Below are positions 13,773 through 63,747 of a DNA stretch of 64,000 nucleotides, in pieces. A program made the position numbers and the translations under genes. Each line of letters opens with the position of its first letter. Position 1 is the stretch's first letter. Where the stretch lies: the IMG/VR virus record IMGVR_UViG_3300020154_000003, positions 302,039-366,038 of that record, one strand, 5' to 3'. The notes beneath the pieces are model-generated. The model was not told the DNA's origin, did not search any database, and was given only the letters and a program-made list of their open reading frames with translations.

Positions 13773-14375
13773 TTACGTATTTTCATATATTGTAAAATAA
13801 TTACCACCCGCATATAAACTTACTTGATTAAGGTTGCCTATAGCCCTCAACCTTACTGAATTTTCAAATACAGGTAATTCTTGTCTAATAATAAATACGT
13901 CACTATCAATAAGTGGATTCTCAGCCATGTTCTGTTTGGCTTCAATCTTTAATATCGGTCTATTCTCAAAATTTACTGTAGACAATCCAGTACTTGTGAA
14001 GGTAAAGGTGGTCGCAGTCGTACTAGTCGTTTCAATATTGGTGTATGTTATGCCTCCGATGTAATAAATCAACGTTTTAGTTGAACCAGTAGTCGTTGAA
14101 GCACCTACATTCAATCCGTCCGTTGATGGGCTGGTTGAAGTTCTGTATCGAATCGAGTAGTCTGGATTGGAATTGTATTTTCTTAACTCAGGCAACCTAT
14201 TTGAGGAAGTTCCTGTGACTGTATATGAGCCGCTATAACCCGACAGGGAAGTAGAACCGCTATAGTATTCGCCTTCATAGGTGTCAAAAAAACCGTAGTC
14301 CAGACTATTGGATGTCAGGAGAACGTTCATATGGTATGAACTTCCAGAAACAAAGGGGAACGACTTTTTTATCAT
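13773..14375 (-). CDS. Ser/Thr-rich putative structural protein
   Basis: 200-aa ORF in the baseplate operon. Confidence 0.5.
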   Translation of the reverse strand: MIKKSFPFVSGSSYHMNVLLTSNSLDYGFFDTYEGEYYSGSTSLSGYSGSYTVTGTSSNRLPELRKYNSNPDYSIRYRTSTSPSTDGLNVGASTTTGSTKTLIYYIGGITYTNIETTSTTATTFTFTSTGLSTVNFENRPILKIEAKQNMAENPLIDSDVFIIRQELPVFENSVRLRAIGNLNQVSLYAGGNYFTIYENT

Positions 14376-19882: not shown

Positions 19883-19974
19883 ATTTATAATAATTTATAG
19901 TTTATTATAAATACTGGAGTTTTTCGGAAAATTTATTGTTTTTTAGTAAAAACTGTAAAAAACTGTAATTTTTT

Positions 19975-20328
19975 TTATTTTTCTTTTCTGTACTTATTTT
20001 TCTTATCTGAATAAGACTGATAAGACGATTCTTCGACCTTTTTTGTTTCTTTTTTAGGAGTTGCTGGCTTTACTAATGCAGATTTAGCCTTATCATGCGC
20101 AGCACAGATTTTGATAAAGGTATTTTTGTCGATTTCAATAACACTCACAGTACCTTCGGCTCTAAGTTTATGAAGACTGATAGGTAAAAAATTGCATTCT
20201 AATGCACATTCGCCATTAGGTTCAAGAGTTACTTTTGAAGTTTTAATCTCAAATGATTGAGCGGTATTAAGTTTAGCGTGTCTTTTAGGTAAAAGATTAG
20301 TTATGTTCTTTATTTTGTAGTATCCCAT
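19975..20328 (-). CDS. Hypothetical protein
   Basis: 117-aa ORF with Lys-rich tail. Confidence 0.6.
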   Translation of the reverse strand: MGYYKIKNITNLLPKRHAKLNTAQSFEIKTSKVTLEPNGECALECNFLPISLHKLRAEGTVSVIEIDKNTFIKICAAHDKAKSALVKPATPKKETKKVEESSYQSYSDKKNKYRKEK

Positions 20329-20333
20329 AGTAT

Positions 20334-21140
20334 TTATTTGTCATCAATTGATTGAAGTAATTTTTCTCCGTAAAGTATTCCATCAATACCTTTTGTTCTT
20401 GCTTTCTCAGCCACCAAGGTGTTAATTAAGTCAGTTTCACTCATTCCAAAATCTTTAGTTTTGGCTTTAAAATCTAAAGTAGGAAACCAAAGTTCAGCCA
20501 AAGCCTTCATCGGATTTTCGTTATTGCCAATGCTCTTATCAATGGTATCAGTTTTCAATACTGACTTAAATTCAATTTCGTATGGTTTGTATCCGGGTAA
20601 CGGCTTTATCACAAAGAAATTACCTGATATATTCTTTTTCAAAGGAGCCTTACGGTATGCTTTAAGAACTTCTTTCTTAGTTTTTACTGGCTTATCGGGT
20701 ATATACATTGATTCATCTTCTTCAGATAAAACTCTCAACATATCACTCTGATCGTGCTTTAATTTAAATTCCTTAAAAGCATTTTGGATGGTATTCAATA
20801 TTTCCATTGCTGTTTTCTTATCACACTTCAATCTAATTGAAGGGACTGCAGCATCAGGTCTTACCAATAGATATGCTGCCAATCTGGAATGACCATCCAG
20901 TACATCATTATCTTTAGCCACCCATATAGGTGATAACTCTTCGCCCTTATTCAGTTTATCAACAAAGTAACTTACTGAATCATTATCAATAAAAGGTTGG
21001 GTTGGATTTAAGTCATTGACATTAATTCCAGCCACTTCATACGGGTGCTGAGTGTTATTCAACTCGCTAGTAACAAATTTAAAGGGAGCACTTACTTGAG
21101 GACTATCCTTAGGTTTGTATATATTGGTTTGAATTTCCAT
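20334..21140 (-). CDS. ParB/Srx-like N-terminal domain protein
   Basis: LSPIWV...VLDGHSRLAAY matches the ParB/Srx DGHxR motif. Confidence 0.65.
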   Translation of the reverse strand: MEIQTNIYKPKDSPQVSAPFKFVTSELNNTQHPYEVAGINVNDLNPTQPFIDNDSVSYFVDKLNKGEELSPIWVAKDNDVLDGHSRLAAYLLVRPDAAVPSIRLKCDKKTAMEILNTIQNAFKEFKLKHDQSDMLRVLSEEDESMYIPDKPVKTKKEVLKAYRKAPLKKNISGNFFVIKPLPGYKPYEIEFKSVLKTDTIDKSIGNNENPMKALAELWFPTLDFKAKTKDFGMSETDLINTLVAEKARTKGIDGILYGEKLLQSIDDK

Positions 21141-21175
21141 CGTACCAATAAATACTGGATATTTTATAAATTTAG

Positions 21176-24100
21176 TTATTGAGGCTCCTGAGGAACTATT
21201 TGTCTCAATAAAATTTCCTTATTGTTTCTTTGCTTACCAGAATAAATATCGAAAAGAAGTTTCTTCAGAATTTCACCGATCTGCTGACCACTATAACCCA
21301 AGGCCAATAAATCATTTCCATTAACTTGCAGTTCTCGCAACGAGAACGGCATACCCATAGACCTCATCTCCTTGATACTGTCTTTTATCTTATCAGGAAT
21401 TATTTGGGAGTTGATCGCATCGGGATAAATCTTATACATGTTGAAGACGGTGATTTTGTTTTTAACTGCACTATCCGAATCGTCTTTAAATGCAAGTTCC
21501 AATGCTCTCATCTCATTGTATGTTGTAAGGTCACCTTTCAAGCTGTTCTTATAAAACTCAGCAGGGTTAGGTATGCCGTACTTTGTCAATTGGTAAATAA
21601 ATTCACCCATAGTTTTAACGTTGTTGAATTCAGCAACGTTGATCTCAGTGTCAACACTAAATATCTGTTCATACAAACCAGTTTCTTTCAATAATTGAGC
21701 ACCAACTGTTGGCTTACCTTTCTTCACAATCTTATCGAATTCAATCAATATTCTCTCAGGAGAAATTTCTCTTATTTTAAAGGCATTTTGTTGGATTGCC
21801 TTTAATGTTTGAGGTTCTATTTTGAAATCAAATCTGGATGCAAATTGAACAGCACGTAGCATTCTCAAAGGGTCTTCCGAAAAGGCTTTCGGATTAACCA
21901 TTCTGATGAGTTTATCTTTTATGTCCTGACTTCCACCGTATGGGTCAATCATTTGTCCATGAGAATCCTTAGCGATTGCATTTATGGTGAAATCCCTTCG
22001 TTCTAAGTCTTTTTCAATGGGTAACGTGTGATCTGACGTAACTTCAAATCCCTGATACCCACCCTGACCCGTGGCCCTTTCGGTTCTTGGTACTGCAATA
22101 TCCAACTCCCCTGTTTGAGGGGTCGTAAATTTGATGATTCCAAACGATTTACCGACATTATCCACGCGACCGTACTTGGCTAAGATTTTCTCAATATCTT
22201 CCAATGGAACGCCTGTAATGAGCAAATCCAAGTCTTTAGATGGTTTGTTCAACATCCCATCACGAACAGCACCACCCACGGAGTAGATTTTACCGCCTGC
22301 GAGTTCAATATCGTTTTTGAAGGGTAGCATGTCTAAATTTGCAATATTTTCGTTGATTTTGCCCTTTTTTGGCTTTAAAACGGTTTTTTTCTTGTCTTTC
22401 GTTGAAAAAACTAGCTTTTCAGACTGCAATTTAATGTTTTTCTTGAACTTCTTACCATATTTCTTACCAGTACCCTTTTTAACATAAGAAATAGTCATGT
22501 GAGGATGATAATCCTTAAATCTATTGGTGTAAGGGAGTTCTTTTAACGCCTTATTTAAGTTTTTCAAGGTTTGAGTAGGGACAACATCAAATTTAACTAC
22601 GTCAAAGTCAGGAGTTTCGAAGTGAGACACCTCTTTTAACTCTATTTCGATGGGTTTTGAGATGTCGATGATGCTTTCCACAATAGCCCTTACCTGATTC
22701 GCGTCAACTCCATCATGGAAGCCATAAAGAATGGTTATATGCGGGTCTTTTTCAATACCAAAGGTTGGTTTGTCATAAATATCGTCTTTTTCGATCATGG
22801 ACGTAATTTCATCCCAATTCGAAACCTTTATTTCTAACATCAACACACCGAATTCTACCTTCTCCTTTCTTTCGGCTTCGGCAAGCATTTCCTTAATTAA
22901 GGGTTCTGCCATGTCCTGTACCTCACCGTCTTGATCCATAAACTCGTCCCAATATCCGCTCATGTCTTGTATTTCAACCATCTCAGGCTGAAATTTAACA
23001 TCAGGTATTTTCTTCCACGTATATCCACCACCAGTTTCATAGTTATATGGCGAAATATCAACATGCATCAATATTCTGTTAGCTGTATCATAAACATATA
23101 TCGAAGTGTGACATTCGTATTCACTGTATCTTGTAAAACACCCATAATCACTATTACTAGTGACTACATCACACATTTTATCTGCAATATCATCGCATAT
23201 ACCACCAGAACCATACATTTCATCATATCCTTCATGATCTTGTTCCCATTCATTATATACTTCCTGAGCAACTGTAGCAAATTGTGTCTTCAAGGATTCC
23301 AATTTAGACTTCAATGCTAAAACAGGAGAATTTTCATTCAGAGATTCATACATCTCATCTGTATCGTCAACTATTTTAATTGATGATGGTTCGAATACAA
23401 TATAGTTGGTTGCATCAGGATTGGTTTTATCACTCATCATATTCCCCACGTATCCAGCTTTACTTAGAAACATTGATGCTGCTTTATTACTACCTAGCAC
23501 GGCAGCTAACCATTCATATACTTGTTTATTTGTGATGTCATAACGATATGATTCATCGTAAAAGTCACTTTGAAACTGTTCAATATCAATATCACTCAAA
23601 CCTAAATTTCTGCCGCGACCAAGTATGTATGAAGCTAAATGATCATCGATGGTTTCATCAAAATTCAAATACCTTCCGTCTCTCAATTGAACGTTCAATA
23701 TCTTATCACCATAGATGGATGCCACTTGAGGGTCATTAGTGAAGTAAAAACCCCATCCTCCCAATTCTCTACCGTCTGATGAACCTATTTTTTTTAATGA
23801 GAAAGCATTAAATTTACTTTTACTGGAAGTACCGTGGTAAGCATCGATTTCACTTACTCTACTTAATTCTTCCTTAATTGTTTGTGTTACTATCGCATTG
23901 ATGTCGCCTTGGTTGCAGGGAGTACTGGTGCCATCACCATTACCGTTTATTTGACACTTCTTCTTGATACCAACAGCTTTCGCATCAGGCATGTACGTCA
24001 TTACTCTTTCAAGAATAGCATTTTCAAGCTTGAGCAATTCAACCTGATCCATCTCTTTATGTGCTGAATATCCAAGATCATAATATGCAAGTACACCCTT

Positions 24101-25393
24101 TCTAAAACCAAAATTCTCTTCAGTAAAATCCGCGCTTCTCACACCATGATCCATGAGTTCTTTAATAACCGCAAGCATTAGTCCAACATTGCGTTTCAAT
24201 TGAGGATTTTGAATCGTTGCCGATTTCTTAACTATTTCATTAAATGCAGGTCTGTCAGATTTTTTTATCATATCTGCAATTTGACTCCATCCAGCAGGTG
24301 ATAAATCCATAAAACCCATGAAGTCAGCGATTATGTCAATTACTCTTTCAGGATCAACGTCAAGTTTTTCACGAAGAATTATATAAATTTTGTCGTTCGG
24401 TTCGTTTAATCTATATGACCCATAAAAACGTCCAATATGTTTTGTGTTCTTACCAACCAATCTTGATGCTTCAATTGCTTCACCTCTATCTGAGGTAATC
24501 TTCAAGATTTTATTACCTCCAATATCAAACGCATAACCTTGAGTTCCCTTACCTAAATTAGCAACAATGCTATGACCTAATTTATTTGCTACTTTAGTGG
24601 CGAAATCATTGATATTAGAATTCTGCCTCATGAGATGTCTTTCTATATCTTCTACCGCCTCATCAACAACTACATTCTCCAATGCCAGTACATCCGCATT
24701 AGGTTTGTCCTTATCACCAGTCATCCCATAATCAAAAAATCCTATCTGACCATTCTTCTTATATCCTAAATTATTGGCACTCAAATCCAAACTTTTCATG
24801 TTATTGGATTTAAGTTCTTTCACAATATTTAAAAGTGAATTGTAGAAATGTTTTTCATTGGGATAATCATTAAGTAAATGCTCAATGTCTGCAGCAAAAT
24901 GTTCATACATTTGAGGTTTACTGGTAGCCATGTCGATAAAGGCTACAGCAAAAAATTTATGGCCAAATCTACTTTGCAATAAATCATCTAAATTTTCAAA
25001 AAGTGTATCAAATTTGGTGGGATCAACCGTTAGTTTTTCACAGATAATGAGGAATACTTTTTTGTTAACACCCCTTTTGTCGATTTCGTAAACTTGATAT
25101 ACATCTGCTAGAAGTTTGTTCCGTTTGCCTTTGATTTTTAAAGCTTCAATAGCTTCAGAGGGATCAATAGTCAATTTATAAACCTTGTCACCAGAAATGT
25201 ATGCGATACCATTGTATCCTTCGCCAGCATAAGTTGGGAGTTTTAAGATTCCTAATTTACCTACCACATCCTTTAATATTTCATCAGCTACTTTTCTATC
25301 CAAAATAGTTTCATTGATAATATTGGAAGCAATGAAGTCTTCAGCAATTACTCGTATAAATTCTCTTCTAATAATTTCTGGCTGTTTACTCAT
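21176..25393 (-). CDS. Polyvalent protein: kinase-like x2, ADP-ribosyltransferase-like, unknown domain, 2H phosphoesterase (Acb1/gp57B-like), CCA-adding nucleotidyltransferase
   Basis: Kinase 1 GEGYNG/VYK/DLSANN/FDYG; kinase 2 GKGTQG/LKI/DFTEEN/YDLG; AYHGT..GFYFT; HITI and HMTI; VGGAVRD..DLD, RRDFTINA, DPLRMLRA. Confidence 0.85.
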   Translation of the reverse strand: MSKQPEIIRREFIRVIAEDFIASNIINETILDRKVADEILKDVVGKLGILKLPTYAGEGYNGIAYISGDKVYKLTIDPSEAIEALKIKGKRNKLLADVYQVYEIDKRGVNKKVFLIICEKLTVDPTKFDTLFENLDDLLQSRFGHKFFAVAFIDMATSKPQMYEHFAADIEHLLNDYPNEKHFYNSLLNIVKELKSNNMKSLDLSANNLGYKKNGQIGFFDYGMTGDKDKPNADVLALENVVVDEAVEDIERHLMRQNSNINDFATKVANKLGHSIVANLGKGTQGYAFDIGGNKILKITSDRGEAIEASRLVGKNTKHIGRFYGSYRLNEPNDKIYIILREKLDVDPERVIDIIADFMGFMDLSPAGWSQIADMIKKSDRPAFNEIVKKSATIQNPQLKRNVGLMLAVIKELMDHGVRSADFTEENFGFRKGVLAYYDLGYSAHKEMDQVELLKLENAILERVMTYMPDAKAVGIKKKCQINGNGDGTSTPCNQGDINAIVTQTIKEELSRVSEIDAYHGTSSKSKFNAFSLKKIGSSDGRELGGWGFYFTNDPQVASIYGDKILNVQLRDGRYLNFDETIDDHLASYILGRGRNLGLSDIDIEQFQSDFYDESYRYDITNKQVYEWLAAVLGSNKAASMFLSKAGYVGNMMSDKTNPDATNYIVFEPSSIKIVDDTDEMYESLNENSPVLALKSKLESLKTQFATVAQEVYNEWEQDHEGYDEMYGSGGICDDIADKMCDVVTSNSDYGCFTRYSEYECHTSIYVYDTANRILMHVDISPYNYETGGGYTWKKIPDVKFQPEMVEIQDMSGYWDEFMDQDGEVQDMAEPLIKEMLAEAERKEKVEFGVLMLEIKVSNWDEITSMIEKDDIYDKPTFGIEKDPHITILYGFHDGVDANQVRAIVESIIDISKPIEIELKEVSHFETPDFDVVKFDVVPTQTLKNLNKALKELPYTNRFKDYHPHMTISYVKKGTGKKYGKKFKKNIKLQSEKLVFSTKDKKKTVLKPKKGKINENIANLDMLPFKNDIELAGGKIYSVGGAVRDGMLNKPSKDLDLLITGVPLEDIEKILAKYGRVDNVGKSFGIIKFTTPQTGELDIAVPRTERATGQGGYQGFEVTSDHTLPIEKDLERRDFTINAIAKDSHGQMIDPYGGSQDIKDKLIRMVNPKAFSEDPLRMLRAVQFASRFDFKIEPQTLKAIQQNAFKIREISPERILIEFDKIVKKGKPTVGAQLLKETGLYEQIFSVDTEINVAEFNNVKTMGEFIYQLTKYGIPNPAEFYKNSLKGDLTTYNEMRALELAFKDDSDSAVKNKITVFNMYKIYPDAINSQIIPDKIKDSIKEMRSMGMPFSLRELQVNGNDLLALGYSGQQIGEILKKLLFDIYSGKQRNNKEILLRQIVPQEPQ

Positions 25394-25400
25394 AAATGTA

Positions 25401-25426
25401 GAAAACCCACGATTTTGTGGGCTTTC
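25401..25426 (-). terminator. Hairpin plus T-run just upstream of the polyprotein ATG
   Basis: CCCAC/GTGGG stem with AAA/TTT extension. Confidence 0.5.
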
Positions 25427-25452
25427 ATATAATAAATACTTTAAAAAGTCGA

Positions 25453-26184
25453 TTATTTCAGGTTTTGTTTCCTCTTTTGAATGTCAAGAATCGTTTCAAC
25501 CACAACTTTCTTAAATTTACCTGAGTCGATAAATTCGTTAATAACATTTTCGATTTTCTCTCTAGTATACATCTCAGTGATAACGTTTCTGAAGGTTTCT
25601 TCAACCAATTTATCAAAGGTGTTACCACCCAAAACATCAATCATAGTCTTACGAATCTGCTCATTCAATAAAGCGGGGTTAACTGCACCATAATGCTGCA
25701 CTTCATTCAAAGGCTGTTGTGGAGCACCAGCACCAACATACTGGCTTGTAGAATACTCGGCTAATTGTTGTGACAATCCAGCATTCGGATTGCTTGTAGG
25801 CTTTTTAGTGATTAATTCCTTGGCTCTAGCCATTTGTTCCTCAAAAAAAGTATCTCTCTTATCAACCATTTGACTTTGTTGTACTGGTTGAGTATACTCA
25901 TTTACTGCTTGTCTACTTGCAGACTGTGTTGGAGGATTATAGTGTGATTTAGCAACAGCTACTGGCACTCCGTGATTGGCTTCAGTACTTTCTGATACTG
26001 CTCTGATTGCCTGAACCGCAGGAGTAGGAACACCACTGTTTACTGAATTAAGTAATTCAACTATGAATCTCTTGCTATCACTTTTACGAATCCCACTACC
26101 AGTACCAAGAGTTTCTTCCTTGATTATTGATTGATTTCTTCTTTCTTCAATCTCTTTCTTAATATTATCTAAATTAAAATTCAT
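25453..26184 (-). CDS. Hypothetical protein, possible internal head protein
   Basis: 243 aa, Q/P-rich linker, several IxE/LNE motifs. Confidence 0.6.
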   Translation of the reverse strand: MNFNLDNIKKEIEERRNQSIIKEETLGTGSGIRKSDSKRFIVELLNSVNSGVPTPAVQAIRAVSESTEANHGVPVAVAKSHYNPPTQSASRQAVNEYTQPVQQSQMVDKRDTFFEEQMARAKELITKKPTSNPNAGLSQQLAEYSTSQYVGAGAPQQPLNEVQHYGAVNPALLNEQIRKTMIDVLGGNTFDKLVEETFRNVITEMYTREKIENVINEFIDSGKFKKVVVETILDIQKRKQNLK

Positions 26185-26848
26185 TTTGATTATCTTGTTT
26201 TTTTATGGTATTATCAAACTCACGTTTCTTTTGATCAAACCAGCTTTTTGAAGCATTATCATTGTCCACACCCTTGTTTCTATTGAAGAATGAAGATTTT
26301 TTAAATCTATCCAACTGTGTCTGAAACCAATTTTTATCGTTAGTCATCCCTTGATAAGTGTCAGGCTGGTTTATTGATTTATCACCTGAAACTTGCTGTG
26401 GTTCTTCACTGCTTGGCTCTGCAGCCAATATTATTTGGGTCATTTGACTATCCTTCGGATTATAATTTGGCCTGTTTGTGCGCATATAATTCGCATCAGT
26501 CTCAAATTTTTTCAATGTTTTAGCCATTGAAGTAATCCCATCCAATCTGAATAATCTCCAGCCCGGAATCTCATCATTTGGCCTCTTTGGTGCGTTCCCT
26601 GTATCGGTAGCACCTGCTTGCTGCCATGCTCTTAAAACTAAATTCCCTGCTTTAGATACACCTAAAACATACGGTTCAATTGTACGATAACCTCTATTCA
26701 CGGTTTCATCGCCTGCATAGTAAATAAAGACAACATCTTTATTGTTGATTGCATTGGCGACAGTATTCCTATCGACCCATTCATTCAAACTTCTAAGTTT
26801 GTCGATTTGGGCCTTAAGATCGTCCTTTCCGAGAATAGGTTTATCCAT
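26174..26848 (-). CDS. Stand-alone WYL domain protein
   Basis: FIYY...YRTIEPYVLG...LRAWQ...WRLFRLDGI. Confidence 0.75.
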   Translation of the reverse strand: MDKPILGKDDLKAQIDKLRSLNEWVDRNTVANAINNKDVVFIYYAGDETVNRGYRTIEPYVLGVSKAGNLVLRAWQQAGATDTGNAPKRPNDEIPGWRLFRLDGITSMAKTLKKFETDANYMRTNRPNYNPKDSQMTQIILAAEPSSEEPQQVSGDKSINQPDTYQGMTNDKNWFQTQLDRFKKSSFFNRNKGVDNDNASKSWFDQKKREFDNTIKKQDNQNEF

Positions 26849-27108
26849 TATACTTTCGATCCGTCATAAGGATTATTCGAAGAATAAATGTTCTTTGCTT
26901 GTTGAGCATTTCTAGTAACGATGTCTGTACGACTACCAATACTACCATTTTTTTCTCCTTTACCTAACTCATCACCATCCGACAATGAATCAGGGTGTGT
27001 TCCTTCATAGGCATTATTTCTACCGTACTTGTTTTTAGCAAGTTCCTTTTGTCTAAATTGAACGCTGTACTCATCAAGAGGTACGTTCTTTCCATCGATA
27101 ATTGGCAT
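26848..27108 (-). CDS. Small protein with internal two-fold repeat
   Basis: RQKELAKNKYGRNNAY vs RNAQQAKNIYSSNNPY. Confidence 0.65.
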   Translation of the reverse strand: MPIIDGKNVPLDEYSVQFRQKELAKNKYGRNNAYEGTHPDSLSDGDELGKGEKNGSIGSRTDIVTRNAQQAKNIYSSNNPYDGSKV

Positions 27109-27155
27109 TTTGTTTCTGTTAACTAAATTATTAAGTTATTTATCAATAAATACTC

Positions 27156-27989
27156 TTATTGATTTAATGTATCATCATTATCTACTGACCATACAATTAA
27201 TTTTTGCTTTGCAAGAGCGATAAAATCATCCAAATGAGGTGTTTTATCTAAATCTCTTATCTGATCGGTTGAAAACCATGCGTATTCAGTATGCTCTTCG
27301 TTAATAACTACGGCAGGTTGACCCTCAACGGAGGTAACAAACACATATTCTACGCTATCTTCAGAAGTTCTAATCACAAAATCACCAATGAAATCAGTTA
27401 TTTGAAGACCAGCTTCTTCCCAAATTTCTCTTTTAGTCCCTTCCTCAGGAGTTTCGCCTGCTTCAATTTTACCACCAACTAACGCCCATTTATTAGGTTC
27501 CCAATGATCGTCTGGATTACGCTTTACAAGCAATACCTTTTCATCACCATCTCCACGACTAAAAATCACTGCCAAACCATTCTTTTGCAATCCTTCAAAC
27601 TCTTCAGTAATCCCCAAGTTAACAGCACCGCCTTGTGCATGTAGTGTTCTATTATCTAATTGAGGCATGAACATAACGTTAGTATTTTTTTTACTTGCCA
27701 CAAGGTTCCTTTCTGCACCTAATGTTCTTTCCACAAAATCCTTCATGTCCTTTCCACCTGCCAACTCATACTCATCTTTCTGAACGGCAGGATTAGCATA
27801 ATCGAAAAAGTTTTTCAATCTTTTAAGCATGGCATAAGTACAAATACCATTATTTACAATCCATTTTCCTCTTTTCGTACCGTTTGTAACTCCATTAACA
27901 GTTGCAAGCTTTGCACGAATCTTTTCAACGATATGTTGTGGTATTCTATATGGTCTTTCTTTGCTCTTATTATAGAGTTCTCTATTCAT
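27156..27989 (-). CDS. Nudix hydrolase with uncharacterised N-terminal domain
   Basis: Full Nudix box GGKIEAGETPEEGTKREIWEEAGL. Confidence 0.85.
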   Translation of the reverse strand: MNRELYNKSKERPYRIPQHIVEKIRAKLATVNGVTNGTKRGKWIVNNGICTYAMLKRLKNFFDYANPAVQKDEYELAGGKDMKDFVERTLGAERNLVASKKNTNVMFMPQLDNRTLHAQGGAVNLGITEEFEGLQKNGLAVIFSRGDGDEKVLLVKRNPDDHWEPNKWALVGGKIEAGETPEEGTKREIWEEAGLQITDFIGDFVIRTSEDSVEYVFVTSVEGQPAVVINEEHTEYAWFSTDQIRDLDKTPHLDDFIALAKQKLIVWSVDNDDTLNQ

Positions 27990-28531
27990 TACTTCAACTG
28001 TTTTATTAAATCACCTTTATCTCTGTCGGATAAATCCGCGAACAGTGATTTGATTTTCACCACTTTATCGCTCATTAAATCATTATCGTTTTTCTTATTT
28101 TTCAATGAAGAATCTTTTCTTTTAGTAATCACATCTTCAATGATGCTTGCCATTTCAGATTCTGTTAATGTTTGATCTTCCTTACTTTTAGGTTTAAAGA
28201 GATCAGTAATTTTACTTGAAAAGAGCAAATACTTATCCTTAACTTCCTCGCTCAAACCATCCCATCCTTTATCTCCAAGTCCATCGTCACCGTCAAAATA
28301 ATTGTAGGCTACCCTAGCTATTCGTAAATTGATAGGCTCATTACCTTCAGATTCGTTATAGTACCCGAAAATTCCCAAAAAATCGTTGGCATAATGCTGA
28401 GAATGTATCCTCGCATTATGATCCGTGGTTCCGTCTGCCGTTACCTGATTAGGTTGATTCTGTGGTTTATCGTCATTTCCAATCAAATTGCCATCAGAGT
28501 CCAAAATTTCTGAGATTTCACGCTTTTTCAT
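27989..28531 (-). CDS. Hypothetical protein
   Basis: 180-aa ORF coupled to the Nudix gene, upstream motif at 28544. Confidence 0.65.
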   Translation of the reverse strand: MKKREISEILDSDGNLIGNDDKPQNQPNQVTADGTTDHNARIHSQHYANDFLGIFGYYNESEGNEPINLRIARVAYNYFDGDDGLGDKGWDGLSEEVKDKYLLFSSKITDLFKPKSKEDQTLTESEMASIIEDVITKRKDSSLKNKKNDNDLMSDKVVKIKSLFADLSDRDKGDLIKQLK

Positions 28532-28555
28532 AGTTTTTTACTTATAAATACTAGA

Positions 28556-31500
28556 TTAATCATCATCTTCTTCACTATCCTCATCATTATCATCCTCTTC
28601 GTCATAAGCTTCTGCAGCTAACAAGTCATAATATTCATCATCGCTGGTCATTTTCTTCTTTTTGTTCAGTTTTTTCAGCGCAGCAAGTTCGATTGCATAA
28701 TATTCCTCAAAAATCTCAACACCTCTAGGGATGGTTGATAATTTTACCTCATCAGGGATGTTGAATTGGTTTTTGAATTTTTTCACGAATTGGGTTTTCA
28801 ATCCAAAGGTAGCCTTAGACATACCTGCATTTAAAAAGTCGTATTCTTTCATATCCTTATCAGCGAATAAATCTTTACGGGCACAGCTTAAATAAAGCCC
28901 ATTAAAATGATAGAGATCATAAACTCTAAAGTTCTTTATCAGTACGAAATCACCCTTTTCAAGAGTATCATTAACTGATTTAACTACTTTATTCTGATTG
29001 CTTTCCTTCAGCTTATCATTTAAAGTTTTGATCTTTTCTTGGTATTCATCCAACTCTTCCAAAGCATTCTCTGCAGGTAGTTTAAACCCTTTCCAAATCA
29101 ATTCTGGATTATAACCAGTACGGTTCCAGAACTCTAATTCCTTTTCTTCGAGAACTAACGATTCTTCATAGTCATCAGCATCAAAATTTTTCAATTTCAA
29201 TTCATCGCCTCCAAAATATTCTCTTTTCGCAGGGTCTTTAATAAGTATCTGCTTTCTTATTTCAGGGGCGAATCCTTCAAGCAACGCACTAACCCTTTTA
29301 TTGAATGATGCAACATATTTTCCAACGTTATAATCGCCAGTCATCTCAGGGTTTTCTTCCAAATCCTTCGGAGATATTAATTGAGATGCAATTATGTCCT
29401 CTCCCTTTTCATTCTTAATCATGGCACTATCACCATGTCCGGGTTTCGTACCGATATTTACATAATATACATAACTATCTTGTTCAGGTTCTGGTGGCAA
29501 CATATGTGCAGCCTTTTGATATTTTTCTTCTAACGTAGAATCATCCTGACCATAAATTTTTTCATACTCTGCAATGACTTGTTGGTTTCGTTGCTGAATA
29601 AGTAACTCCATGTGCGCCTGCTTGGCCTTCTTTTTACCTGTCTTATCATTCCCTCTATTTACATAGGTGGAGATACTATTTTTCAATTTCTTCTTAGTAG
29701 CAATTTTCTTTAAAGGAATTTGTTTGTAATAAATTTTCTTCAAATACTCATTGTAGTATTCCACAAATTCATCACCCTTACCCATCAAGATCAACTTCAA
29801 ACCTTTGTCAATGAAATCTTCAATATATTCAGACATAGTTTTGGATTTGATTGTATTACCAGTCAACTTGATTTTTGGTGGGACAACCTTTCCAGTTTTT
29901 TCATCAATGCTTTCTTCAGTTAAGTTGGCATAATTGATACGAGACAAGTTTAGTGAACTCTGCCACATACCATCCAAGTCAACTCCGATATAAGGTGAAT
30001 CCATTAGATCGTTGAATTTCTCAACAACCGCTTCAACACCCGTATATTTTTTACCACCACTTTCATATACCCATGCATCTTCAATGGATATTGGCTCTTC
30101 TCTACATACATTTCCCTCAATATCCAATAGAGTAAATTTAGGGTACGAAAAGTTAATACCGTCAGTTACCGCCAGCAACGGTACGAAAGTGTACTTCTTA
30201 AAATAAGTTATCGCTTGACGTAATTGAATACGTCCAGTACATGTAATCCTAGCTGCACAAATGTTATCAGACCAGTTAAAAGCAACACCTGAACCCAAAG
30301 CACCAAACAATGAGTTGTTCAAGATTTTAATAGGTAGCTGCTTAACCTTAAACTTATTTCTCTGATCTTTCGGTAGCGGAGATTTATCACCAGCTAAAAA
30401 CTTAAACTCATTACGAGTCGTAGTCAGGTATAAAAGAATTTTCTTAATAACGCCAGTGATGTCGAAAGTAGGGAAGATACCATAATGCAACTGATTTGAA
30501 GGGTACATACCCTTGAAGTCAATTTTCGTAATATTCTCACTAAACCCTTTTTTAAAACACCTTGCAAGGCCACCAGAGAACTTTTCTTGCTTATCGGGGC
30601 AAGGTATCGCCAATCCATTTTCATAACTCCATGTGGTCATAATCAAGTTCCACACAGCAGCATTACCCATTGTACAAACCCTTTGATATGAGGTTGGTAC
30701 AATTTTAGCCAACAAGAATGAACTTTGATTGTACAGAGAATCTACCTTATCGGTTTCCCACAAGTCATCCAACAAATAACGTCTTACAATGTCAGCACCC
30801 TTAATGAATTTATATTTACCGTACTGTACAGTTTTAGACTTGAGCCACGTAATTGCCTCAGGACTCATTTGAGACAAAATTGAATTTCTTAAATTCTTGC
30901 GAGTCTCTTCATCGGCTTGAGATAACTGTAAATCGTATAAGTGAACAGCTTGATCCTGATATTGTAATGGTACACGTTCATACTCATTATTTTCAGGATT
31001 AATAATATAGACCTTATTCTCACGCCATGTTTCATGAATGAATTCACCATCCACGTACATACGATTAGGTTTTGCAATTTTCTCGAATTTGCAAATATAT
31101 TTTAACTTATTACTTTTTATCTCGCTATTTACTGCTGCAGTCTTTTTAACTGCATGAAGAATATCGAGAATTGAGTAGCCCCACATTTTTGTGGCTTTGT
31201 ATCGCTCAGTAGTGCCTCCGAATTTCACACTACTCTTTTTAGTTTCGTCCTTCTTAATTCTACGACTAAACCTTCTCACTCCATCTTTGTCAACATATTC
31301 AGTGTTGTCTAATGTTGTGCGAATCAACGACAAATTAATACCTAATATCCCTGCTCTCCCAAGAATAAAATCAAAGTCAAAGTCTTCCGAGTTAAATCCT
31401 GCAATTACTGCTGGTTTGATGTGGTTAACTAAGTTAAAGAACTTGATGATTAGACCCTTCTCTTCTTCATCATCATTTTCTTTTTTTACTTCAAGAATTT

Positions 31501-32365
31501 CTTCAAATCCTCGATTATCCCTTACACCTATTTGAAATATTCTACCATTTTGCCATTTCAAACTAGTTGTCTCAATATCGAAAACTAATTTATGTAAGTC
31601 TTCATAATCTTCAAACCCTTTATACAAACGGCAACCTGTCGATATGAAAAATTGTTCATCTGGCTTAATGGAATAGAAGAGGTGTTTATATTTATATTCA
31701 TTCTTTATCAATTTCAGTAAGAAATCACAAAGATCATTCGCCCATTTCAGAACGCTTTTCTTAAAAACATTTCCAGCAAACTCGTAATAAGCTTTACTGA
31801 TAAAGTTCAAAGCTTCTATTTTATTATCGACCTTACTACCACCTTTATCATCGTCTTTTTTCGTGTCTTTGTTATTTTGTTTTAACAACTTAACAACGTC
31901 ACTATGAAATTCCTCATTATAAAAGGAGGGGAGTGGTAATGGAAATTTAATGTCTTTGAATCTTGTCAATTCGTATTTTTCCCACATATCAATACCGCCT
32001 TGCTTCAAAAATTCAAGAATGGCATTGTATGATTTAGTACTTGATACTTTGATAGTAAATCCATCTTCGAGCCTTGGATGCTTACCAGTAGCAAGATTCT
32101 CCATTTTGATCTCGAACTTTTGTTCGGCATCTCTGCGTTTATTTATGTCGCCACCAAACAGTTCAATACCGTTTTTTTCAAGGTTCTTAAGATAAACGAA
32201 TGGAGTATATTGTATTCTTTTAAGTGCAGGTTCCTTTTCAGGATGATGAATTATACAATCTGCATAATTCGTGTGATAGTATGTTTCAACATTAACTAAA
32301 TACTTTAAATCGTTGTGCCCTTCTAAAAATGAACTAATTTCTTTTATTATCGCTTCTTTCTGCAT
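28556..32365 (-). CDS. Family B DNA polymerase with 3'-5' exonuclease
   Basis: ExoI FDIET, ExoII FNSEDFDF, ExoIII YLLDD; motif A DFKGMYPS, motif B KILNNSLFG, motif C AVTDG. Confidence 0.92.
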   Translation of the reverse strand: MQKEAIIKEISSFLEGHNDLKYLVNVETYYHTNYADCIIHHPEKEPALKRIQYTPFVYLKNLEKNGIELFGGDINKRRDAEQKFEIKMENLATGKHPRLEDGFTIKVSSTKSYNAILEFLKQGGIDMWEKYELTRFKDIKFPLPLPSFYNEEFHSDVVKLLKQNNKDTKKDDDKGGSKVDNKIEALNFISKAYYEFAGNVFKKSVLKWANDLCDFLLKLIKNEYKYKHLFYSIKPDEQFFISTGCRLYKGFEDYEDLHKLVFDIETTSLKWQNGRIFQIGVRDNRGFEEILEVKKENDDEEEKGLIIKFFNLVNHIKPAVIAGFNSEDFDFDFILGRAGILGINLSLIRTTLDNTEYVDKDGVRRFSRRIKKDETKKSSVKFGGTTERYKATKMWGYSILDILHAVKKTAAVNSEIKSNKLKYICKFEKIAKPNRMYVDGEFIHETWRENKVYIINPENNEYERVPLQYQDQAVHLYDLQLSQADEETRKNLRNSILSQMSPEAITWLKSKTVQYGKYKFIKGADIVRRYLLDDLWETDKVDSLYNQSSFLLAKIVPTSYQRVCTMGNAAVWNLIMTTWSYENGLAIPCPDKQEKFSGGLARCFKKGFSENITKIDFKGMYPSNQLHYGIFPTFDITGVIKKILLYLTTTRNEFKFLAGDKSPLPKDQRNKFKVKQLPIKILNNSLFGALGSGVAFNWSDNICAARITCTGRIQLRQAITYFKKYTFVPLLAVTDGINFSYPKFTLLDIEGNVCREEPISIEDAWVYESGGKKYTGVEAVVEKFNDLMDSPYIGVDLDGMWQSSLNLSRINYANLTEESIDEKTGKVVPPKIKLTGNTIKSKTMSEYIEDFIDKGLKLILMGKGDEFVEYYNEYLKKIYYKQIPLKKIATKKKLKNSISTYVNRGNDKTGKKKAKQAHMELLIQQRNQQVIAEYEKIYGQDDSTLEEKYQKAAHMLPPEPEQDSYVYYVNIGTKPGHGDSAMIKNEKGEDIIASQLISPKDLEENPEMTGDYNVGKYVASFNKRVSALLEGFAPEIRKQILIKDPAKREYFGGDELKLKNFDADDYEESLVLEEKELEFWNRTGYNPELIWKGFKLPAENALEELDEYQEKIKTLNDKLKESNQNKVVKSVNDTLEKGDFVLIKNFRVYDLYHFNGLYLSCARKDLFADKDMKEYDFLNAGMSKATFGLKTQFVKKFKNQFNIPDEVKLSTIPRGVEIFEEYYAIELAALKKLNKKKKMTSDDEYYDLLAAEAYDEEDDNDEDSEEDDD

Positions 32366-32706
32366 TTTGTAATCTTAAGCGTCTTCTTTGACGGATTGTA
32401 AATATAGTTTTTATCTTGAAAAATACACACATGTTTCTTTAAATATTTTTCAGGATTGGGAGGGAATACGTTGATTATCCACAGTGCTGACATCAAATTA
32501 CCACCAAATATTTCAACCAGAGAATAATCTGAAGAAATTAAGAATTCCATCGATAATTTTTCAACTATTTCTGGCCTTATTTCCTTTTGTGTGATTAAAA
32601 ATCGACCACATTCATTAACTATTTCTCGTAAACGTTCTTCGGTAAAATCTTGTATGAGAAAACTTTCTAGTATTTCTTGTATAGAACTGTAAGGATATTC
32701 ACTCAT
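32347..32706 (-). CDS. Hypothetical protein
   Basis: 119-aa ORF overlapping the helicase stop and polymerase start. Confidence 0.55.
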   Translation of the reverse strand: MSEYPYSSIQEILESFLIQDFTEERLREIVNECGRFLITQKEIRPEIVEKLSMEFLISSDYSLVEIFGGNLMSALWIINVFPPNPEKYLKKHVCIFQDKNYIYNPSKKTLKITKCRKKR

Positions 32707-59953: not shown

Positions 59954-59968
59954 TGTACCTTTGAAAAG

Positions 59969-60040
59969 TAGGGATTAAGGGATTTGCACCCATATCTGTG
60001 TTCGCAATGAACACCGTTCTAAAAGTTAAACTAAGCCCCT
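59969..60040 (-). ncRNA. Degenerate 72-nt tRNA-like RNA unit 1
   Basis: Cloverleaf AGGGGCT-TA-GTTT/GAAC-G-GTGTT CATTGCG AACAC-AGAT-ATGGG TGCAAAT CCCTT-AATCCCT-A; lacks D-loop GG, TTC, U33 and CCA. Confidence 0.7.
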
Positions 60041-60058
60041 ATTTTTCTTATGAGGTTG

Positions 60059-60089
60059 CAAATATAGTTAAAAGTAACTTATTGTCAAC
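60059..60089 (-). promoter_or_regulatory. Bacteroidetes-type housekeeping (early) promoter
   Basis: GTTG-N19-TATATTTG matches TTTG-N19-21-TAnnTTTG with one mismatch; also reads TTGACA-N16-TATATT. Confidence 0.7.
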
Positions 60090-60197
60090 CTCTTTTTGAT
60101 ATTTTTTTGTGGTTTTACCCTTATTTTTCGAAGGGTAAAGATAAATACGAATTTTAATGGAAAAAGTTATAGAATTTTATAACTTTTTCCTATTTTT

Positions 60198-63586: not shown

Positions 63587-63627
63587 GTCTATGTTAATAT
63601 AAAATGATTAAAGTAAAGCATCCCCAT

Positions 63628-63650
63628 CCCTCACCATGAATGAGGGTTTT
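63628..63650. terminator. Hairpin upstream of nrdA
   Basis: CCCTCA/TGAGGG stem; T-run on the plus strand only. Confidence 0.4.
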
Positions 63651-63747
63651 GAATACATAATAAATTTTGGTTTTACGACTTCCGAAGTGTTTTTATAAAT
63701 ACAACTCAGACTTTTAATTTTCCAGAAGAAAGTGAAATTTTATCTTC

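What the first reader, a model, noticed from the sequence alone, without database searches (positions are those of the whole stretch)
20334..28531. Cassette of nucleotide/RNA-acting enzymes with late-type motifs and IxE/LNE signals
Seen: ParB-like, polyprotein, WYL, Nudix and four hypotheticals are contiguous; five GTATTTAT motifs (21148, 25432, 27146, 28544, and 19907 at the flank) mark them as co-regulated with structural genes; most carry LNE/IKEE/ITEE/LTESE/LSEE motifs. Inference: an ejected-protein locus acting before phage transcription starts.
Basis: inference. Interest (0 to 1): 0.62.

Follow-up and report, generated by a model that had tools for sequence, protein, structure and literature searches.

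The report
Late-promoter polyvalent enzyme cassette, jumbo phage
A soil jumbo phage carries a conserved block of late-type genes, centred on one giant protein that fuses kinase, ADP-ribosyltransferase, phosphoesterase and tRNA CCA-adding enzymes; this block may be loaded into the virus head and injected with the DNA, but that step is not shown.

Summary
The observation largely holds. Window 19975-28531 (minus strand) holds eight contiguous genes:
- a ParB/Srx-fold protein;
- a 1405-aa polyvalent protein (two truncated Ser/Thr-kinase-like domains, ART-PolyVal, an unknown domain, a 2H phosphoesterase, a CCA-adding enzyme);
- a WYL-like protein;
- a Nudix hydrolase;
- four unknowns.

All five GTATTTAT copies are real. 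Each fills an intergenic gap just upstream of a start codon. This is the only run of five consecutive motif-positive gaps in the 366-kb genome.

The same element (a-GTATTTAT-N4-AA) precedes the tail sheath, portal, terminase, prohead protease and gp25 genes. It is also conserved at orthologous sites in five diverged relatives. It is therefore a real, late-type promoter-like element, though it also precedes RNR and a tRNA.

Raw [LI]xE density is at chance. However, [LIVM]xE motifs sit in the linkers before every domain of the polyvalent family, and the genome encodes a T4 gp21-type prohead protease. This fits processing and packaging but does not prove it: PolB shows a conserved N-terminal motif too.

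Verdict: a new variant of the known "polyvalent protein" theme. Ejection is plausible (about 0.45) and untested.

The parts
28544..28551 (-). Motif A (GTATTTAT), 12 nt upstream of the p180 start; directly follows the PolB stop
   Evidence: conserved upstream of the orthologous ~190-aa gene in L024 and L026
27989..28531 (-). p180, acidic protein of unknown function. A short N-terminal leader ends in I-S-E(8), followed by the conserved I-[LI]-D-S-x-G
   Evidence: no family hit
27156..27989 (-). Nudix hydrolase (Nudix domain at residues 141-258, intact Nudix box) with a conserved N-terminal domain of unknown type. The linker carries [LIVM]xE in all 5 orthologs
27146..27153 (-). Motif A, 37 nt upstream of p86
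   Evidence: conserved in L021, L023, L024 and L025
26848..27108 (-). p86, a small Gly/Asn/Lys-rich protein, conserved in all relatives
26174..26848 (-). WYL-like protein; conserved L-N-E just before the conserved core
25453..26184 (-). p243, unknown function; the only cassette protein with an excess of [LI]xE (9 against 2.6 expected)
25432..25439 (-). Motif A upstream of the polyvalent gene
25401..25426 (-). Terminator-like hairpin with a U-run, lying between motif A and the polyvalent start codon (-15.5 kcal/mol, z = -6.3)
   Evidence: same position with different stem sequences in L021, L023 and L026
21176..25393 (-). 1405-aa polyvalent protein (P0001)
24689..25291 (-). Kinase-like domain 1 (residues ~35-235), a truncated Ser/Thr-kinase-type fold with all catalytic residues
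   Evidence: matches the description in PMC5512222
23984..24601 (-). Kinase-like domain 2 (residues ~265-470)
23363..23839 (-). ART-PolyVal ADP-ribosyltransferase domain (residues 519-677)
   Evidence: 39.5 bits against a cut-off of 31.2; the H / Y / E positions can be read in the sequence
23333..23341 (-). L-N-E (residues 685-687), followed by N, at the ART / domain X junction, in a low-pLDDT linker
22904..23326 (-). Domain X (residues ~690-830), folded, Cys-containing, no known fold match
   Evidence: best Z 5.3
22394..22819 (-). 2H phosphoesterase domain (residues ~859-1000) with two H-x-T motifs
   Evidence: Usb1 Z 13.2; Acb1 Z 11.8
22349..22357 (-). I-N-E (residues 1013-1015), followed by N, at the 2H / CCA junction, in a low-pLDDT linker. 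A [LIVM]xE lies at this position in 18 of 19 homologs
21194..22297 (-). Class II CCA-adding tRNA nucleotidyltransferase (residues ~1033-1400)
21148..21155 (-). Motif A, 7 nt upstream of the ParB-like start (near-leaderless)
20334..21140 (-). ParB/Srx-fold protein (D-G-H-S-R here, D-G-H-H-R in most relatives) with a conserved C-terminal domain. The inter-domain linker carries L-S-E (residues 138-140)
19975..20328 (-). p117, unknown function; 5-nt gap after the ParB-like gene, so probably co-transcribed
19907..19914 (-). Motif A of the next unit (the 467-aa gene and the genes after it, leading to gp25/gp6 baseplate genes)

Best explanation
SHOWN
- The window is the last 64 kb of a complete 366-kb uncultivated soil jumbo phage of the T4 superfamily. 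The phage has a gp23-type capsid protein, a gp21-type prohead protease, and gp25/gp6-like baseplate genes.
- Between its SNF2-helicase/PolB genes and its baseplate genes lies a block of eight genes in a conserved order.
- The block is cut into four short transcription units. Each unit starts at a phage-specific element, a-GTATTTAT-N4-AA.
- The same element precedes the sheath, portal, terminase, protease and gp25 genes.
- The central product fuses two truncated Ser/Thr-kinase-like domains, an ADP-ribosyltransferase, an unknown domain, a 2H phosphoesterase and a CCA-adding enzyme. All keep their catalytic residues.
- Its neighbours are a ParB/Srx-fold protein, a Nudix hydrolase and a WYL-like protein.

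INFERRED
- The element is a -10-like promoter read with one of the phage's own sigma-like factors. The transcription start would lie about 5 nt downstream, giving very short or absent leaders.
- The class is late.
- The polyvalent protein, and probably the ParB-like protein and some small neighbours, are made late and enter the prohead.
- The gp21-type protease cuts them after Glu at [LIVM]-x-E sites in the flexible inter-domain linkers.
- They travel with the DNA into the next cell.
- There the kinase and ART domains modify host proteins. The 2H, CCA-adding, Nudix and WYL-like parts repair tRNA 3' ends or destroy nucleotide alarm signals, before any phage gene is expressed.
For: Genome and core genes.

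Synteny is kept in six relatives (protein identity 30-89%, GC 26-36%).

Motif:
- Enrichment.
- It precedes sheath, portal, TerL, protease, an endolysin-like gene and gp25.
- It is conserved at orthologous gaps while the flanks diverge, often right after a terminator hairpin.
- The extended consensus has A at +5/+6, which equals the A of ATG in six genes with 4-nt spacing.
- The cassette holds the genome's only run of five motif-positive gaps.
- PolB and the helicase lack it.
- Sigma70_r2-like genes are present.

Domains:
- Pfam, PHROGs and PDB matches.
- Kinase hallmark residues are invariant in 23 repeats, and a profile search hits only protein kinases.
- 2H fold.
- ParB fold and invariant D-G-H-x-R.

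Packaging hints:
- The architecture and its position next to baseplate genes match the published polyvalent-protein and T4 Alt pattern (PMC5512222).
- [LIVM]xE lies just upstream of the CCA domain (18/19, background 29%), the 2H domain (17/17, background 24%) and the kinase domains (19/23, background 36%), and also before the ART domains.
- The two [LI]NEN sites lie in low-pLDDT linkers.
- [LI]NEN also occurs in the scaffold-like protein and at the protease C-terminus. The capsid protein has an invariant [IL]-N-E-[SA] at residues 58-61, where T4 gp23 loses a 65-residue propeptide (PMC9026906).
- The ParB linker keeps [LIVM]xE in 46 of 47 homologs.
- A Nudix domain occurs inside a PHROG portal family.
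Against: - There is no proteomic, transcript-timing or 5'-end data. The only runs found are contigs.
- [LI]xE density is at chance in 7 of 8 proteins.
- The junction windows were chosen after looking at the data, and the homologs are not independent.
- PolB, which is unlikely to be packaged, also has a positionally conserved N-terminal [LI]xE.
- Short N-terminal leaders are only weakly enriched in motif-A genes (15-17% against 9%, p about 0.05-0.08).
- No shared capsid-targeting leader is seen among the cassette proteins.
- Motif A also precedes the RNR genes and tRNA-Gln, so the class may not be purely late.
- The ParB-like protein does not match the DdrB-type ParB Pfam family.
- tRNA repair would be useful throughout infection, so it does not need delivery by the virion.
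Confidence: 0.45

Rival explanations
1. A late-expressed but cytoplasmic counter-defence and RNA-repair module. The products are made together with virion proteins but stay in the infected cell. They keep translation running during the heavy late phase: the 2H and CCA-adding domains mend tRNA 3' ends, Nudix and 2H remove nucleotide signals, and the kinase and ART domains silence host factors. They are never packaged.
For: - The enzymes are intact and coherent as a tRNA-end or nucleotide-signal toolkit.
- CCA-adding enzymes are common stand-alone genes of jumbo phages and are read as RNA repair (PMC7824862).
- The kinase + 2H + CCA core is kept across the family, while ART and domain X come and go.
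- [LI]xE counts are at chance, and PolB shows the same N-terminal motif.
- The hairpin after the promoter could simply tune expression.
Against: - It does not explain why five unrelated domain types each keep a [LIVM]xE in the variable linker before them.
- It does not explain the fixed place between PolB and the baseplate genes under the virion-gene promoter type.
- It does not explain why disparate enzymes are fused into one chain, the hallmark of proteins predicted to be transferred (PMC5512222).
Confidence: 0.33
2. GTATTTAT is the general promoter of a phage sigma factor, used from mid-infection onward and not a late-specific signal. The cassette would then be ordinary middle/late host-takeover genes, like T4 ModA/ModB, with no link to virion assembly.
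For: - The motif also lies upstream of the RNR large-subunit gene (108 nt) and of tRNA-Gln.
- The genome has two or three sigma-like genes, and at least one other promoter-like class (motif B) sits upstream of small central genes.
- Timing is inferred only by association.
Against: - Every annotated gene directly behind the motif at short spacing is a virion or lysis gene.
- PolB and the helicase lack it in all relatives.
- The motif is concentrated in the two genome arms that hold the structural genes.
Confidence: 0.15
3. Some or all of the small unknown proteins (p180, p86, p243, p117) are tail or baseplate building or assembly parts. They would merely be neighbours of the enzymes, so the 'cassette' is not one functional unit.
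For: - The block abuts the baseplate genes and shares their promoter type.
- No family assignment exists for these four proteins.
- p117 has faint Ig-like hits.
Against: - They are interleaved and translationally coupled with the Nudix, WYL-like and ParB-like genes through overlapping or abutting ORFs.
- No structural family was detected.
Confidence: 0.05

Closest known systems
Polyvalent proteins of phages and conjugative elements (Iyer, Burroughs, Anand, de Souza, Aravind 2017, PMC5512222)
   Same: - One polypeptide joins enzymes of unrelated chemistry.
- It contains the family-specific ART (Pfam ART-PolyVal, above cut-off).
- The kinase-like domains fit the paper's description: the C-terminal subdomain is lost and the active site is kept.
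- It has a 2H domain.
- It has a ParB/Srx-fold neighbour.
- The gene lies next to virion genes.
- Domain content varies between relatives.
   Different: - It includes a full class II CCA-adding enzyme, which that paper does not mention (0 occurrences). The paper's Pol-beta NTases are minimal forms from Firmicute elements.
- It has no peptidase domain of its own.
- The ParB-like partner does not match the DdrB-type Pfam family.
- The host clade is a T4-superfamily soil jumbo phage.
- Injection is as unproven here as for most members of the class.
T4 Alt and internal proteins IPI-III (capsid-targeting leader, gp21 processing, ejection)
   Same: - An ADP-ribosyltransferase is encoded next to baseplate genes under a late-type promoter.
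- The genome has a gp21-type protease.
- Candidate cleavage sites have the T4 form [LI]-x-E. These include a short leader on p180 and I-R-E(9) on the protease itself, comparable to T4 gp21 L-I-E(9).
   Different: - The ART is of the H-Y-[E/D] class, not Alt's R-S-E class.
- No shared 10-residue targeting leader was found.
- The candidate sites are mostly internal, at domain junctions.
- The promoter element differs from T4's TATAAATA.
Phage P1 Dar system (DarB, DdrB) and phiKZ/SPN3US ejection proteins
   Same: Large multi-enzyme or multi-protein cargo is loaded into the head, partly processed by a protease cutting after Glu, and ejected to protect or establish the incoming genome.
   Different: There is no sequence relationship beyond the ParB/Srx fold. 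The enzymes here act on proteins, RNA ends and nucleotides rather than being DNA methylase/helicase or inner-body proteins.
Bacterial multifunctional CCA enzyme and phage tRNA repair (T4 Pnkp/Rnl1); Acb1-type 2H anti-CBASS nucleases
   Same: - A CCA-adding head domain is joined to a phosphoesterase able to clear 2',3'-cyclic or phosphorylated ends.
- The 2H fold is close to LigT/Usb1 and to Acb1 and viral cGAMP or 2'-5' phosphodiesterases.
   Different: - The phosphoesterase is a 2H domain rather than the HD domain of the E. coli enzyme (own knowledge).
- No RNA ligase is present.
- The Acb1 Pfam match is below cut-off (21.2 against 27 bits), so the substrate (RNA end or cyclic oligonucleotide) is open.

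Membership tests
Polyvalent proteins (PMC5512222) | Two or more domains of disparate biochemical activity in one polypeptide | tested here: met
   Kinase-like x2, ART, 2H and CCA-adding domains in one 1405-aa ORF without stops
Polyvalent proteins (PMC5512222) | Encoded by a phage or conjugative element, in the context of late/packaging genes | tested here: met
   Complete virus record; lies between PolB and the gp25/gp6 baseplate genes in all relatives; shares motif A with virion genes
Polyvalent proteins (PMC5512222) | Carries domains of the class-specific repertoire (ART-PolyVal; truncated kinase; 2H) | tested here: met
   PF18760 at 39.5 bits against a cut-off of 31.2; kinase repeat of about 210 aa lacking the C-lobe, with an intact active site (description); 2H fold
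Polyvalent proteins (PMC5512222) | Transferred into the host cell together with the DNA | not testable with these tools
   Needs virion proteomics or an injection assay
T4-type head-internal cargo (CTS + gp21 processing) | Genome encodes a gp21-type prohead protease | tested here: met
   PF03420 at 78.7 bits, C1:69088-69567
T4-type head-internal cargo (CTS + gp21 processing) | N-terminal targeting leader of about 10 residues shared among cargo proteins and ending in [LI]-x-E | tested here: inconclusive
   p180 orthologs have an 8-10-residue leader ending in [LI]xE. There is no shared leader sequence. PolB shows a similar conserved motif. Enrichment in motif-A genes is weak
T4-type head-internal cargo (CTS + gp21 processing) | Cleavage after Glu by the prohead protease | not testable with these tools
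   Only candidate sites can be given: junction [LIVM]xE motifs in low-pLDDT linkers
ParB/Srx superfamily | ParB/sulfiredoxin fold with the conserved active-site Arg motif | tested here: met
   Foldseek top hits are all ParB-N/Noc/Srx; VIA Z 10.2-7.5; D82, G83 and H84 in 47/47 and R86 in 46/47 homologs
DdrB-like ParB family (phage P1 DdrB type) | Sequence match to the DdrB-type ParB family model | tested here: not met
   No Pfam family at E up to 1 for P0002; only phrog_2859, of unknown function, at 1e-8
WYL domain | Pfam PF13280 at or above the gathering score | tested here: not met
   21.1 bits against 21.8. All 6 orthologs do hit WYL at E up to 0.1. A profile search of PDB sequences found nothing. 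Best called WYL-like
Nudix hydrolases | Nudix fold match and an intact Nudix box | tested here: met
   PF00293 at 80.3 bits; the box G-x5-E-x7-R-E-U-x-E-E-x-G-U can be read in the sequence
Class II CCA-adding enzymes | PolyA_pol head domain plus RNA-binding neck; catalytic carboxylates | tested here: met
   PF01743 at 83.8 bits and PF12627 at 62.5 bits; PDB CCA-adding enzymes at 3e-30. The G-G-x-V-R-D and D-x-D motifs can be read. CCA-adding and poly(A)-adding specificity cannot be told apart by sequence here
2H phosphoesterases / Acb1 | Two H-x-T/S motifs and the 2H fold; for Acb1, a family-level match | tested here: met
   The 2H criteria are met: PF13563 at 44.8 bits, two P-H-x-T motifs, Z 13.2-10. 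Acb1 family membership is not met (21.2 against 27 bits)
T4 late promoters (gp55-dependent TATAAATA) | TATAAATA -10 element with no -35 element, upstream of late genes | tested here: not met
   The element is a-GTATTTAT-N4-AA, a different sequence. It does share the single-element layout and the link to virion genes. Sigma70_r2-like genes are present; gp55 homology was not tested

The most novel reading that the evidence does not exclude
The 1405-aa protein may be a true polyprotein of the capsid. The T4-type prohead protease would cut it at the conserved [LIVM]-x-E (often [LI]-N-E-N) sites before every domain. The phage head would then carry five or six separate ready-made enzymes, including a CCA-adding enzyme, and inject them with the DNA. 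That would be the first virion-delivered tRNA-repair activity. It would also be a general way for T4-like jumbo phages to load swappable enzyme modules without a dedicated targeting leader on each one.
Probability: 0.25. Interest if true: 0.75.

Novelty: new variant of a known kind. Interest (0 to 1): 0.5.

Why it matters
Polyvalent proteins are a computational prediction with very few tested cases. This locus offers a clean test system for four reasons.
- The clade is very abundant and uncultivated.
- The gene order is fixed.
- The promoter element is sharply defined.
- The candidate protease sites are explicit: after E687 and E1015 of the polyvalent protein, and after E140 of the ParB-like protein.

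If the sites are real, prohead proteases double as maturases for injected enzyme cargo, and tRNA 3'-end repair is deployed before any phage gene is read. The element a-GTATTTAT-N4-AA and its short or absent leaders also give a handle on transcription and translation start in this clade.

Tried and rejected
- **Near-identity DNA search of phage records:** no match.
- **Peptide-pattern scan of IMG/VR with the polyvalent protein:** nothing.
- **tblastn of the ParB-like protein against phages:** nothing.
- **PHROG scans of 20 further motif-A and motif-B genes:** almost no named hits, so the functional split between the two motif classes rests on few annotated genes.
- **The four 1184-1452-aa neighbours as possible phage RNA polymerase subunits:** rejected. 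Two are DUF5122 beta-propeller proteins and two have no match.
- **Raw [LI]xE density as a signal:** rejected, at chance.
- **N-terminal [LI]xE run over 8 consecutive genes:** real, but it includes PolB and a neighbour, so it is not a specific cargo mark.
- **WYL profile against PDB sequences:** nothing.
- **ESM Atlas look-alikes of p243:** only unnamed viral clusters.
- **Domain X fold search:** no match above Z 5.3.
- **C-terminal domain of the ParB-like protein:** only weak ART-superfamily-like hits (Z up to 5.8). Kept as a lead, not a finding.
- **Rfam scan of the window:** nothing.
- **Public runs:** only contigs of 90-95% relatives from soil, labelled metatranscriptomic but probably DNA, with no information on starts or ends.
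- **Literature searches:** nothing relevant on the motif or on virion-borne CCA enzymes.

Full report
**Where the window lies**

The window is the last 64 kb of a single 366,038-bp virus record with GC 36%, rated complete by CheckV and assembled from a soil metagenome.
- No close relative exists among deposited phage genomes. PolB is 24% identical at best, and the capsid protein is 30-32% identical over its full length and about 40% over its C-terminal 43%.
- The phage belongs to the T4 superfamily. It has a gp23-type capsid protein, a gp21-type prohead protease (Peptidase_S77), and sheath, portal, large terminase and gp25/gp6-like baseplate genes.
The clade is therefore large and widespread but uncultivated.

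**The genes**

All cassette ORFs are on the minus strand and tightly packed. In the order of transcription they are:
- **p180** (27989-28531).
- **Nudix hydrolase** (27156-27989), with an extra N-terminal domain.
- **p86** (26848-27108).
- **WYL-like protein** (26174-26848).
- **p243** (25453-26184).
- **1405-aa polyvalent protein** (21176-25393).
- **ParB-like protein** (20334-21140).
- **p117** (19975-20328).

PolB (28556-32365) and an SNF2 helicase lie upstream of the block. The baseplate genes lie downstream.

**The big protein**

- Pfam finds ART-PolyVal (residues 519-677), a 2H phosphoesterase (about 859-1000) and a CCA-adding nucleotidyltransferase head with its RNA-binding neck (1036-1245 and on to about 1400). 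PDB sequence matches to CCA-adding enzymes reach 3e-30.
- The first 500 residues are two copies of a domain of about 210 residues. An alignment of 23 copies from the family shows only the protein-kinase hallmark positions as invariant: the G-loop G/A, Lys, Glu, D-x4-N and D-x-G.
- A profile of that alignment hits only eukaryotic-type Ser/Thr and dual-specificity kinases across the catalytic and DFG loops, at E about 1e-3.
- This matches the 'polyvalent kinase' of Iyer et al. 2017: the C-terminal subdomain is lost and the active site is kept.
- An AlphaFold model of residues 670-1045 (pLDDT 78) confirms the 2H fold: Usb1 Z 13.2, LigT, Acb1 Z 11.8, and viral cGAMP and 2'-5' phosphodiesterases.
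- The same model shows a folded domain X (about 690-830) with no known match.
- Catalytic motifs of every recognisable domain can be read intact in the sequence.

**The neighbours**

- **ParB-like protein.** It has no Pfam hit, but its model matches only ParB-N, Noc and sulfiredoxin folds. D-G-H-x-R is invariant in 47 clade-restricted homologs.
  - Its C-terminal domain gives only weak matches, many of them to ART-superfamily toxins (Z up to 5.8). This is a lead only.
- **WYL.** The match is just below Pfam's cut-off but recurs in all six orthologs.
- **Nudix.** The match is unambiguous. One PHROG family of portal proteins contains a matching Nudix segment.

**Relatives and synteny**

- A search with residues 1-1000 of the polyvalent protein found 22 related proteins of 831-2130 aa.
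- Local alignments show a constant core of kinase repeat(s), 2H and CCA-adding domains.
- ART and domain X come and go, repeat numbers differ, and in some proteins the 2H/CCA order is swapped.
- Six genomic contexts were read. All show helicase, PolB, a protein of about 190 aa, Nudix, a protein of about 80 aa, the WYL-like protein, a protein of about 220-260 aa, the polyvalent protein, variable inserts, the ParB-like protein, a 117-aa and a 460-aa protein, and then gp25 and the gp6-like gene.
- The block is therefore a conserved core feature of the clade, not a strain-specific island.

**The motif**

- GTATTTAT occurs 22 times in the window against 6.2 expected and 87 times in the genome. It is the commonest 8-mer in the 80 nt upstream of genes.
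- It lies on the coding strand, typically 11-17 nt before the ATG.
- The extended consensus is a-GTATTTAT-N4-AA. The conserved A five bases downstream coincides with the A of ATG in six genes with 4-nt spacing.
  - I read this as a -10-like element with a transcription start about 5 nt downstream, giving very short or no leaders. This is an inference.
- Only one variant, CTATTTAT, is also enriched.
- Genes directly behind the motif include the tail sheath, portal, large terminase, prohead protease, the scaffold-like gene that heads the capsid operon, an endolysin-like gene and gp25.
- Copies cluster in the two genome arms that hold structural genes. A second element (AACAt.Tta...tttTaCGTATAAT) sits upstream of small genes in the central part.
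- The genome also encodes two or three sigma70-region-2-like proteins.
- In five relatives with GC from 26 to 36%, the exact 8-mer recurs at the orthologous gaps, often right after a terminator hairpin, while the flanks have diverged.
- Within the cassette and the next unit, all five gaps of 20 nt or more carry it. This is the only such run in the genome; the background is 49 of 278 gaps.
- PolB and the helicase lack it.
- Against a strictly late reading, copies also lie 108 nt upstream of the RNR large-subunit gene and upstream of tRNA-Gln.

**The [LI]xE question**

*Raw counts.* Counted simply, [LI]xE is no more frequent in the cassette proteins than composition predicts, except in p243.

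*Positional pattern in the polyvalent family.*
- A [LIVM]xE lies just upstream of the CCA domain in 18 of 19 proteins (background 29%).
- It lies upstream of the 2H domain in 17 of 17 (background 24%) and upstream of the kinase repeats in 19 of 23 (background 36%).
- It also lies 4-8 residues before the ART domains.
- In the window protein, the two [LI]-N-E-N sites (685-688 and 1013-1016) fall in low-confidence linkers between well-folded domains.

*Same motif in known protease substrates.*
- [LI]NEN is about twice as frequent in the proteome as expected (11 against 4.9). It also occurs in the acidic coiled-coil protein next to the protease and at the C-terminus of the protease itself.
- The protease begins with a leader ending in I-R-E(9).
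- The capsid protein has an invariant [IL]-N-E-[SA] at residues 58-61.
- For comparison, T4 gp21 cuts after Glu, with determinants three and one residues before the cut. It removes 7 to 65 N-terminal residues from head proteins, carries L-I-E(9) itself, and trims the C-termini of Alt and of itself (PMC9026906).

*Other cassette proteins.*
- The ParB-like protein keeps [LIVM]xE in its inter-domain linker in 46 of 47 homologs.
- The Nudix linker keeps one in 5 of 5 orthologs, the WYL-like protein has L-[NT]-E before its core in 6 of 6, and p180 has a short leader ending in [LI]xE in 3 of 4.

*Cautions.*
- The windows were chosen after inspection, and the homologs are related to one another.
- PolB also has a conserved N-terminal [LI]xE.
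- Short leaders of this kind are only weakly enriched among motif-A genes.

**A regulatory detail**

A strong hairpin followed by a U-run (-15.5 kcal/mol, z = -6.3) lies between motif A and the polyvalent start codon. It recurs at the same place with different stem sequences in three relatives. There are two possible readings, which I cannot separate.
- It is the terminator of the upstream unit, overlapping the next promoter.
- It is a 5' stabiliser or attenuator that sets a low level of the large protein.

**Interpretation**

- Shown: the anatomy, the conserved synteny, the reality and conservation of the motif, and its association with virion genes.
- Inferred: the motif is a late promoter, and the products are loaded into the prohead, cut at the junction sites and injected.
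- This reading agrees with the published prediction for polyvalent proteins and with the T4 Alt precedent of an ART gene next to baseplate genes.
- No data here show packaging.
- The main rival is a late but cytoplasmic repair and counter-defence module.
- I put the ejection reading at about 0.45 for the polyvalent protein, and much lower for all eight products.

**Novelty**

The class (polyvalent proteins) and the idea of injection are known. Four things are new:
- the particular fusion, a full CCA-adding enzyme with a 2H domain, kinases and an ART;
- its fixed place in a very abundant uncultivated T4-like jumbo clade;
- the defined promoter element;
- the testable proposal that the prohead protease, rather than a built-in peptidase, cuts the protein at its domain junctions.

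Noticed in passing
genome-wide; in the window e.g. 13773-14375 upstream region: A second upstream element, AACAt.Tta-N5-tttTaCGTATAAT (37 copies of CGTATAAT), lies 2-33 nt before mostly small genes in the central 80-300 kb. It is probably another, earlier promoter class with a sigma70-like -10.
   Followed up: partly
genome C1:175356-175919(+), 300487-301059(-), 31400-32173(+): Two clear and one weak Sigma70_r2-like gene. These are candidate phage sigma factors for the motif classes.
   Followed up: partly
window 63587-63702 (-): Motif A lies 108 nt upstream of the RNR large-subunit gene, followed by a leader with a hairpin (ccctca...tgaggg). There is no Rfam match. This could be a regulated leader, or evidence that the motif is not purely late.
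   Followed up: partly
window 59968-60148 (-): tRNA-Gln (UUG) lies downstream of a motif A copy and a hairpin.
   Followed up: no
window 40657-48797 (-): Two giant proteins (1250 and 1452 aa) are built of DUF5122 beta-propeller repeats (7 and 12 matched stretches). They are probably fibres or receptor-binding proteins. The next two giants (1372 and 1184 aa) have no match at all.
   Followed up: partly
window 24622-24711 (polyvalent residues ~228-258): In contigs of 90-95% identical relatives from other soil samples, an 88-nt patch of the same length is diverged beyond alignment. It corresponds to the linker between the two kinase repeats.
   Followed up: no
polyvalent residues ~478-503 (window ~23885-23962) and homologs P0006, P0007, P0011, P0015: A conserved Cys-x-Cys-containing linker peptide (K-K-K-C-Q-x-x-G-N-G-D-G-T-S-T-x-C-N-Q-G-D) follows the kinase repeat in several family members. 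Its role is unknown.
   Followed up: no
loci L023, L025, L026 (relatives): Homing-endonuclease genes (GIY-YIG/NUMOD3, LAGLIDADG) are inserted at different points of the cassette in relatives but not in the window.
   Followed up: no
genome-wide; six genes, e.g. C1:74136, 88763, 132880, 147497, 198582, 288379: In six genes the ATG starts exactly 4 nt after GTATTTAT, so the predicted transcription start is the A of the start codon. These are likely leaderless mRNAs. Upstream regions in general lack Shine-Dalgarno-like sequences.
   Followed up: partly
window 21176-32706: Eight consecutive genes, including PolB, have an [LI]xE within their first 23 residues against a 26% background. This is the strongest such run in the genome and is unexplained.
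   Followed up: partly
genome 160-180 kb: AGTACTGG occurs 123 times in the genome, 48 of them in one 20-kb bin. A palindromic CCTTAATTAAG occurs 39 times. Neither was examined further.
   Followed up: no
window 20330-20337 (+): One GTATTTAT copy lies on the opposite strand, in the 5-nt gap region between the ParB-like gene and p117. It is probably chance.
   Followed up: no
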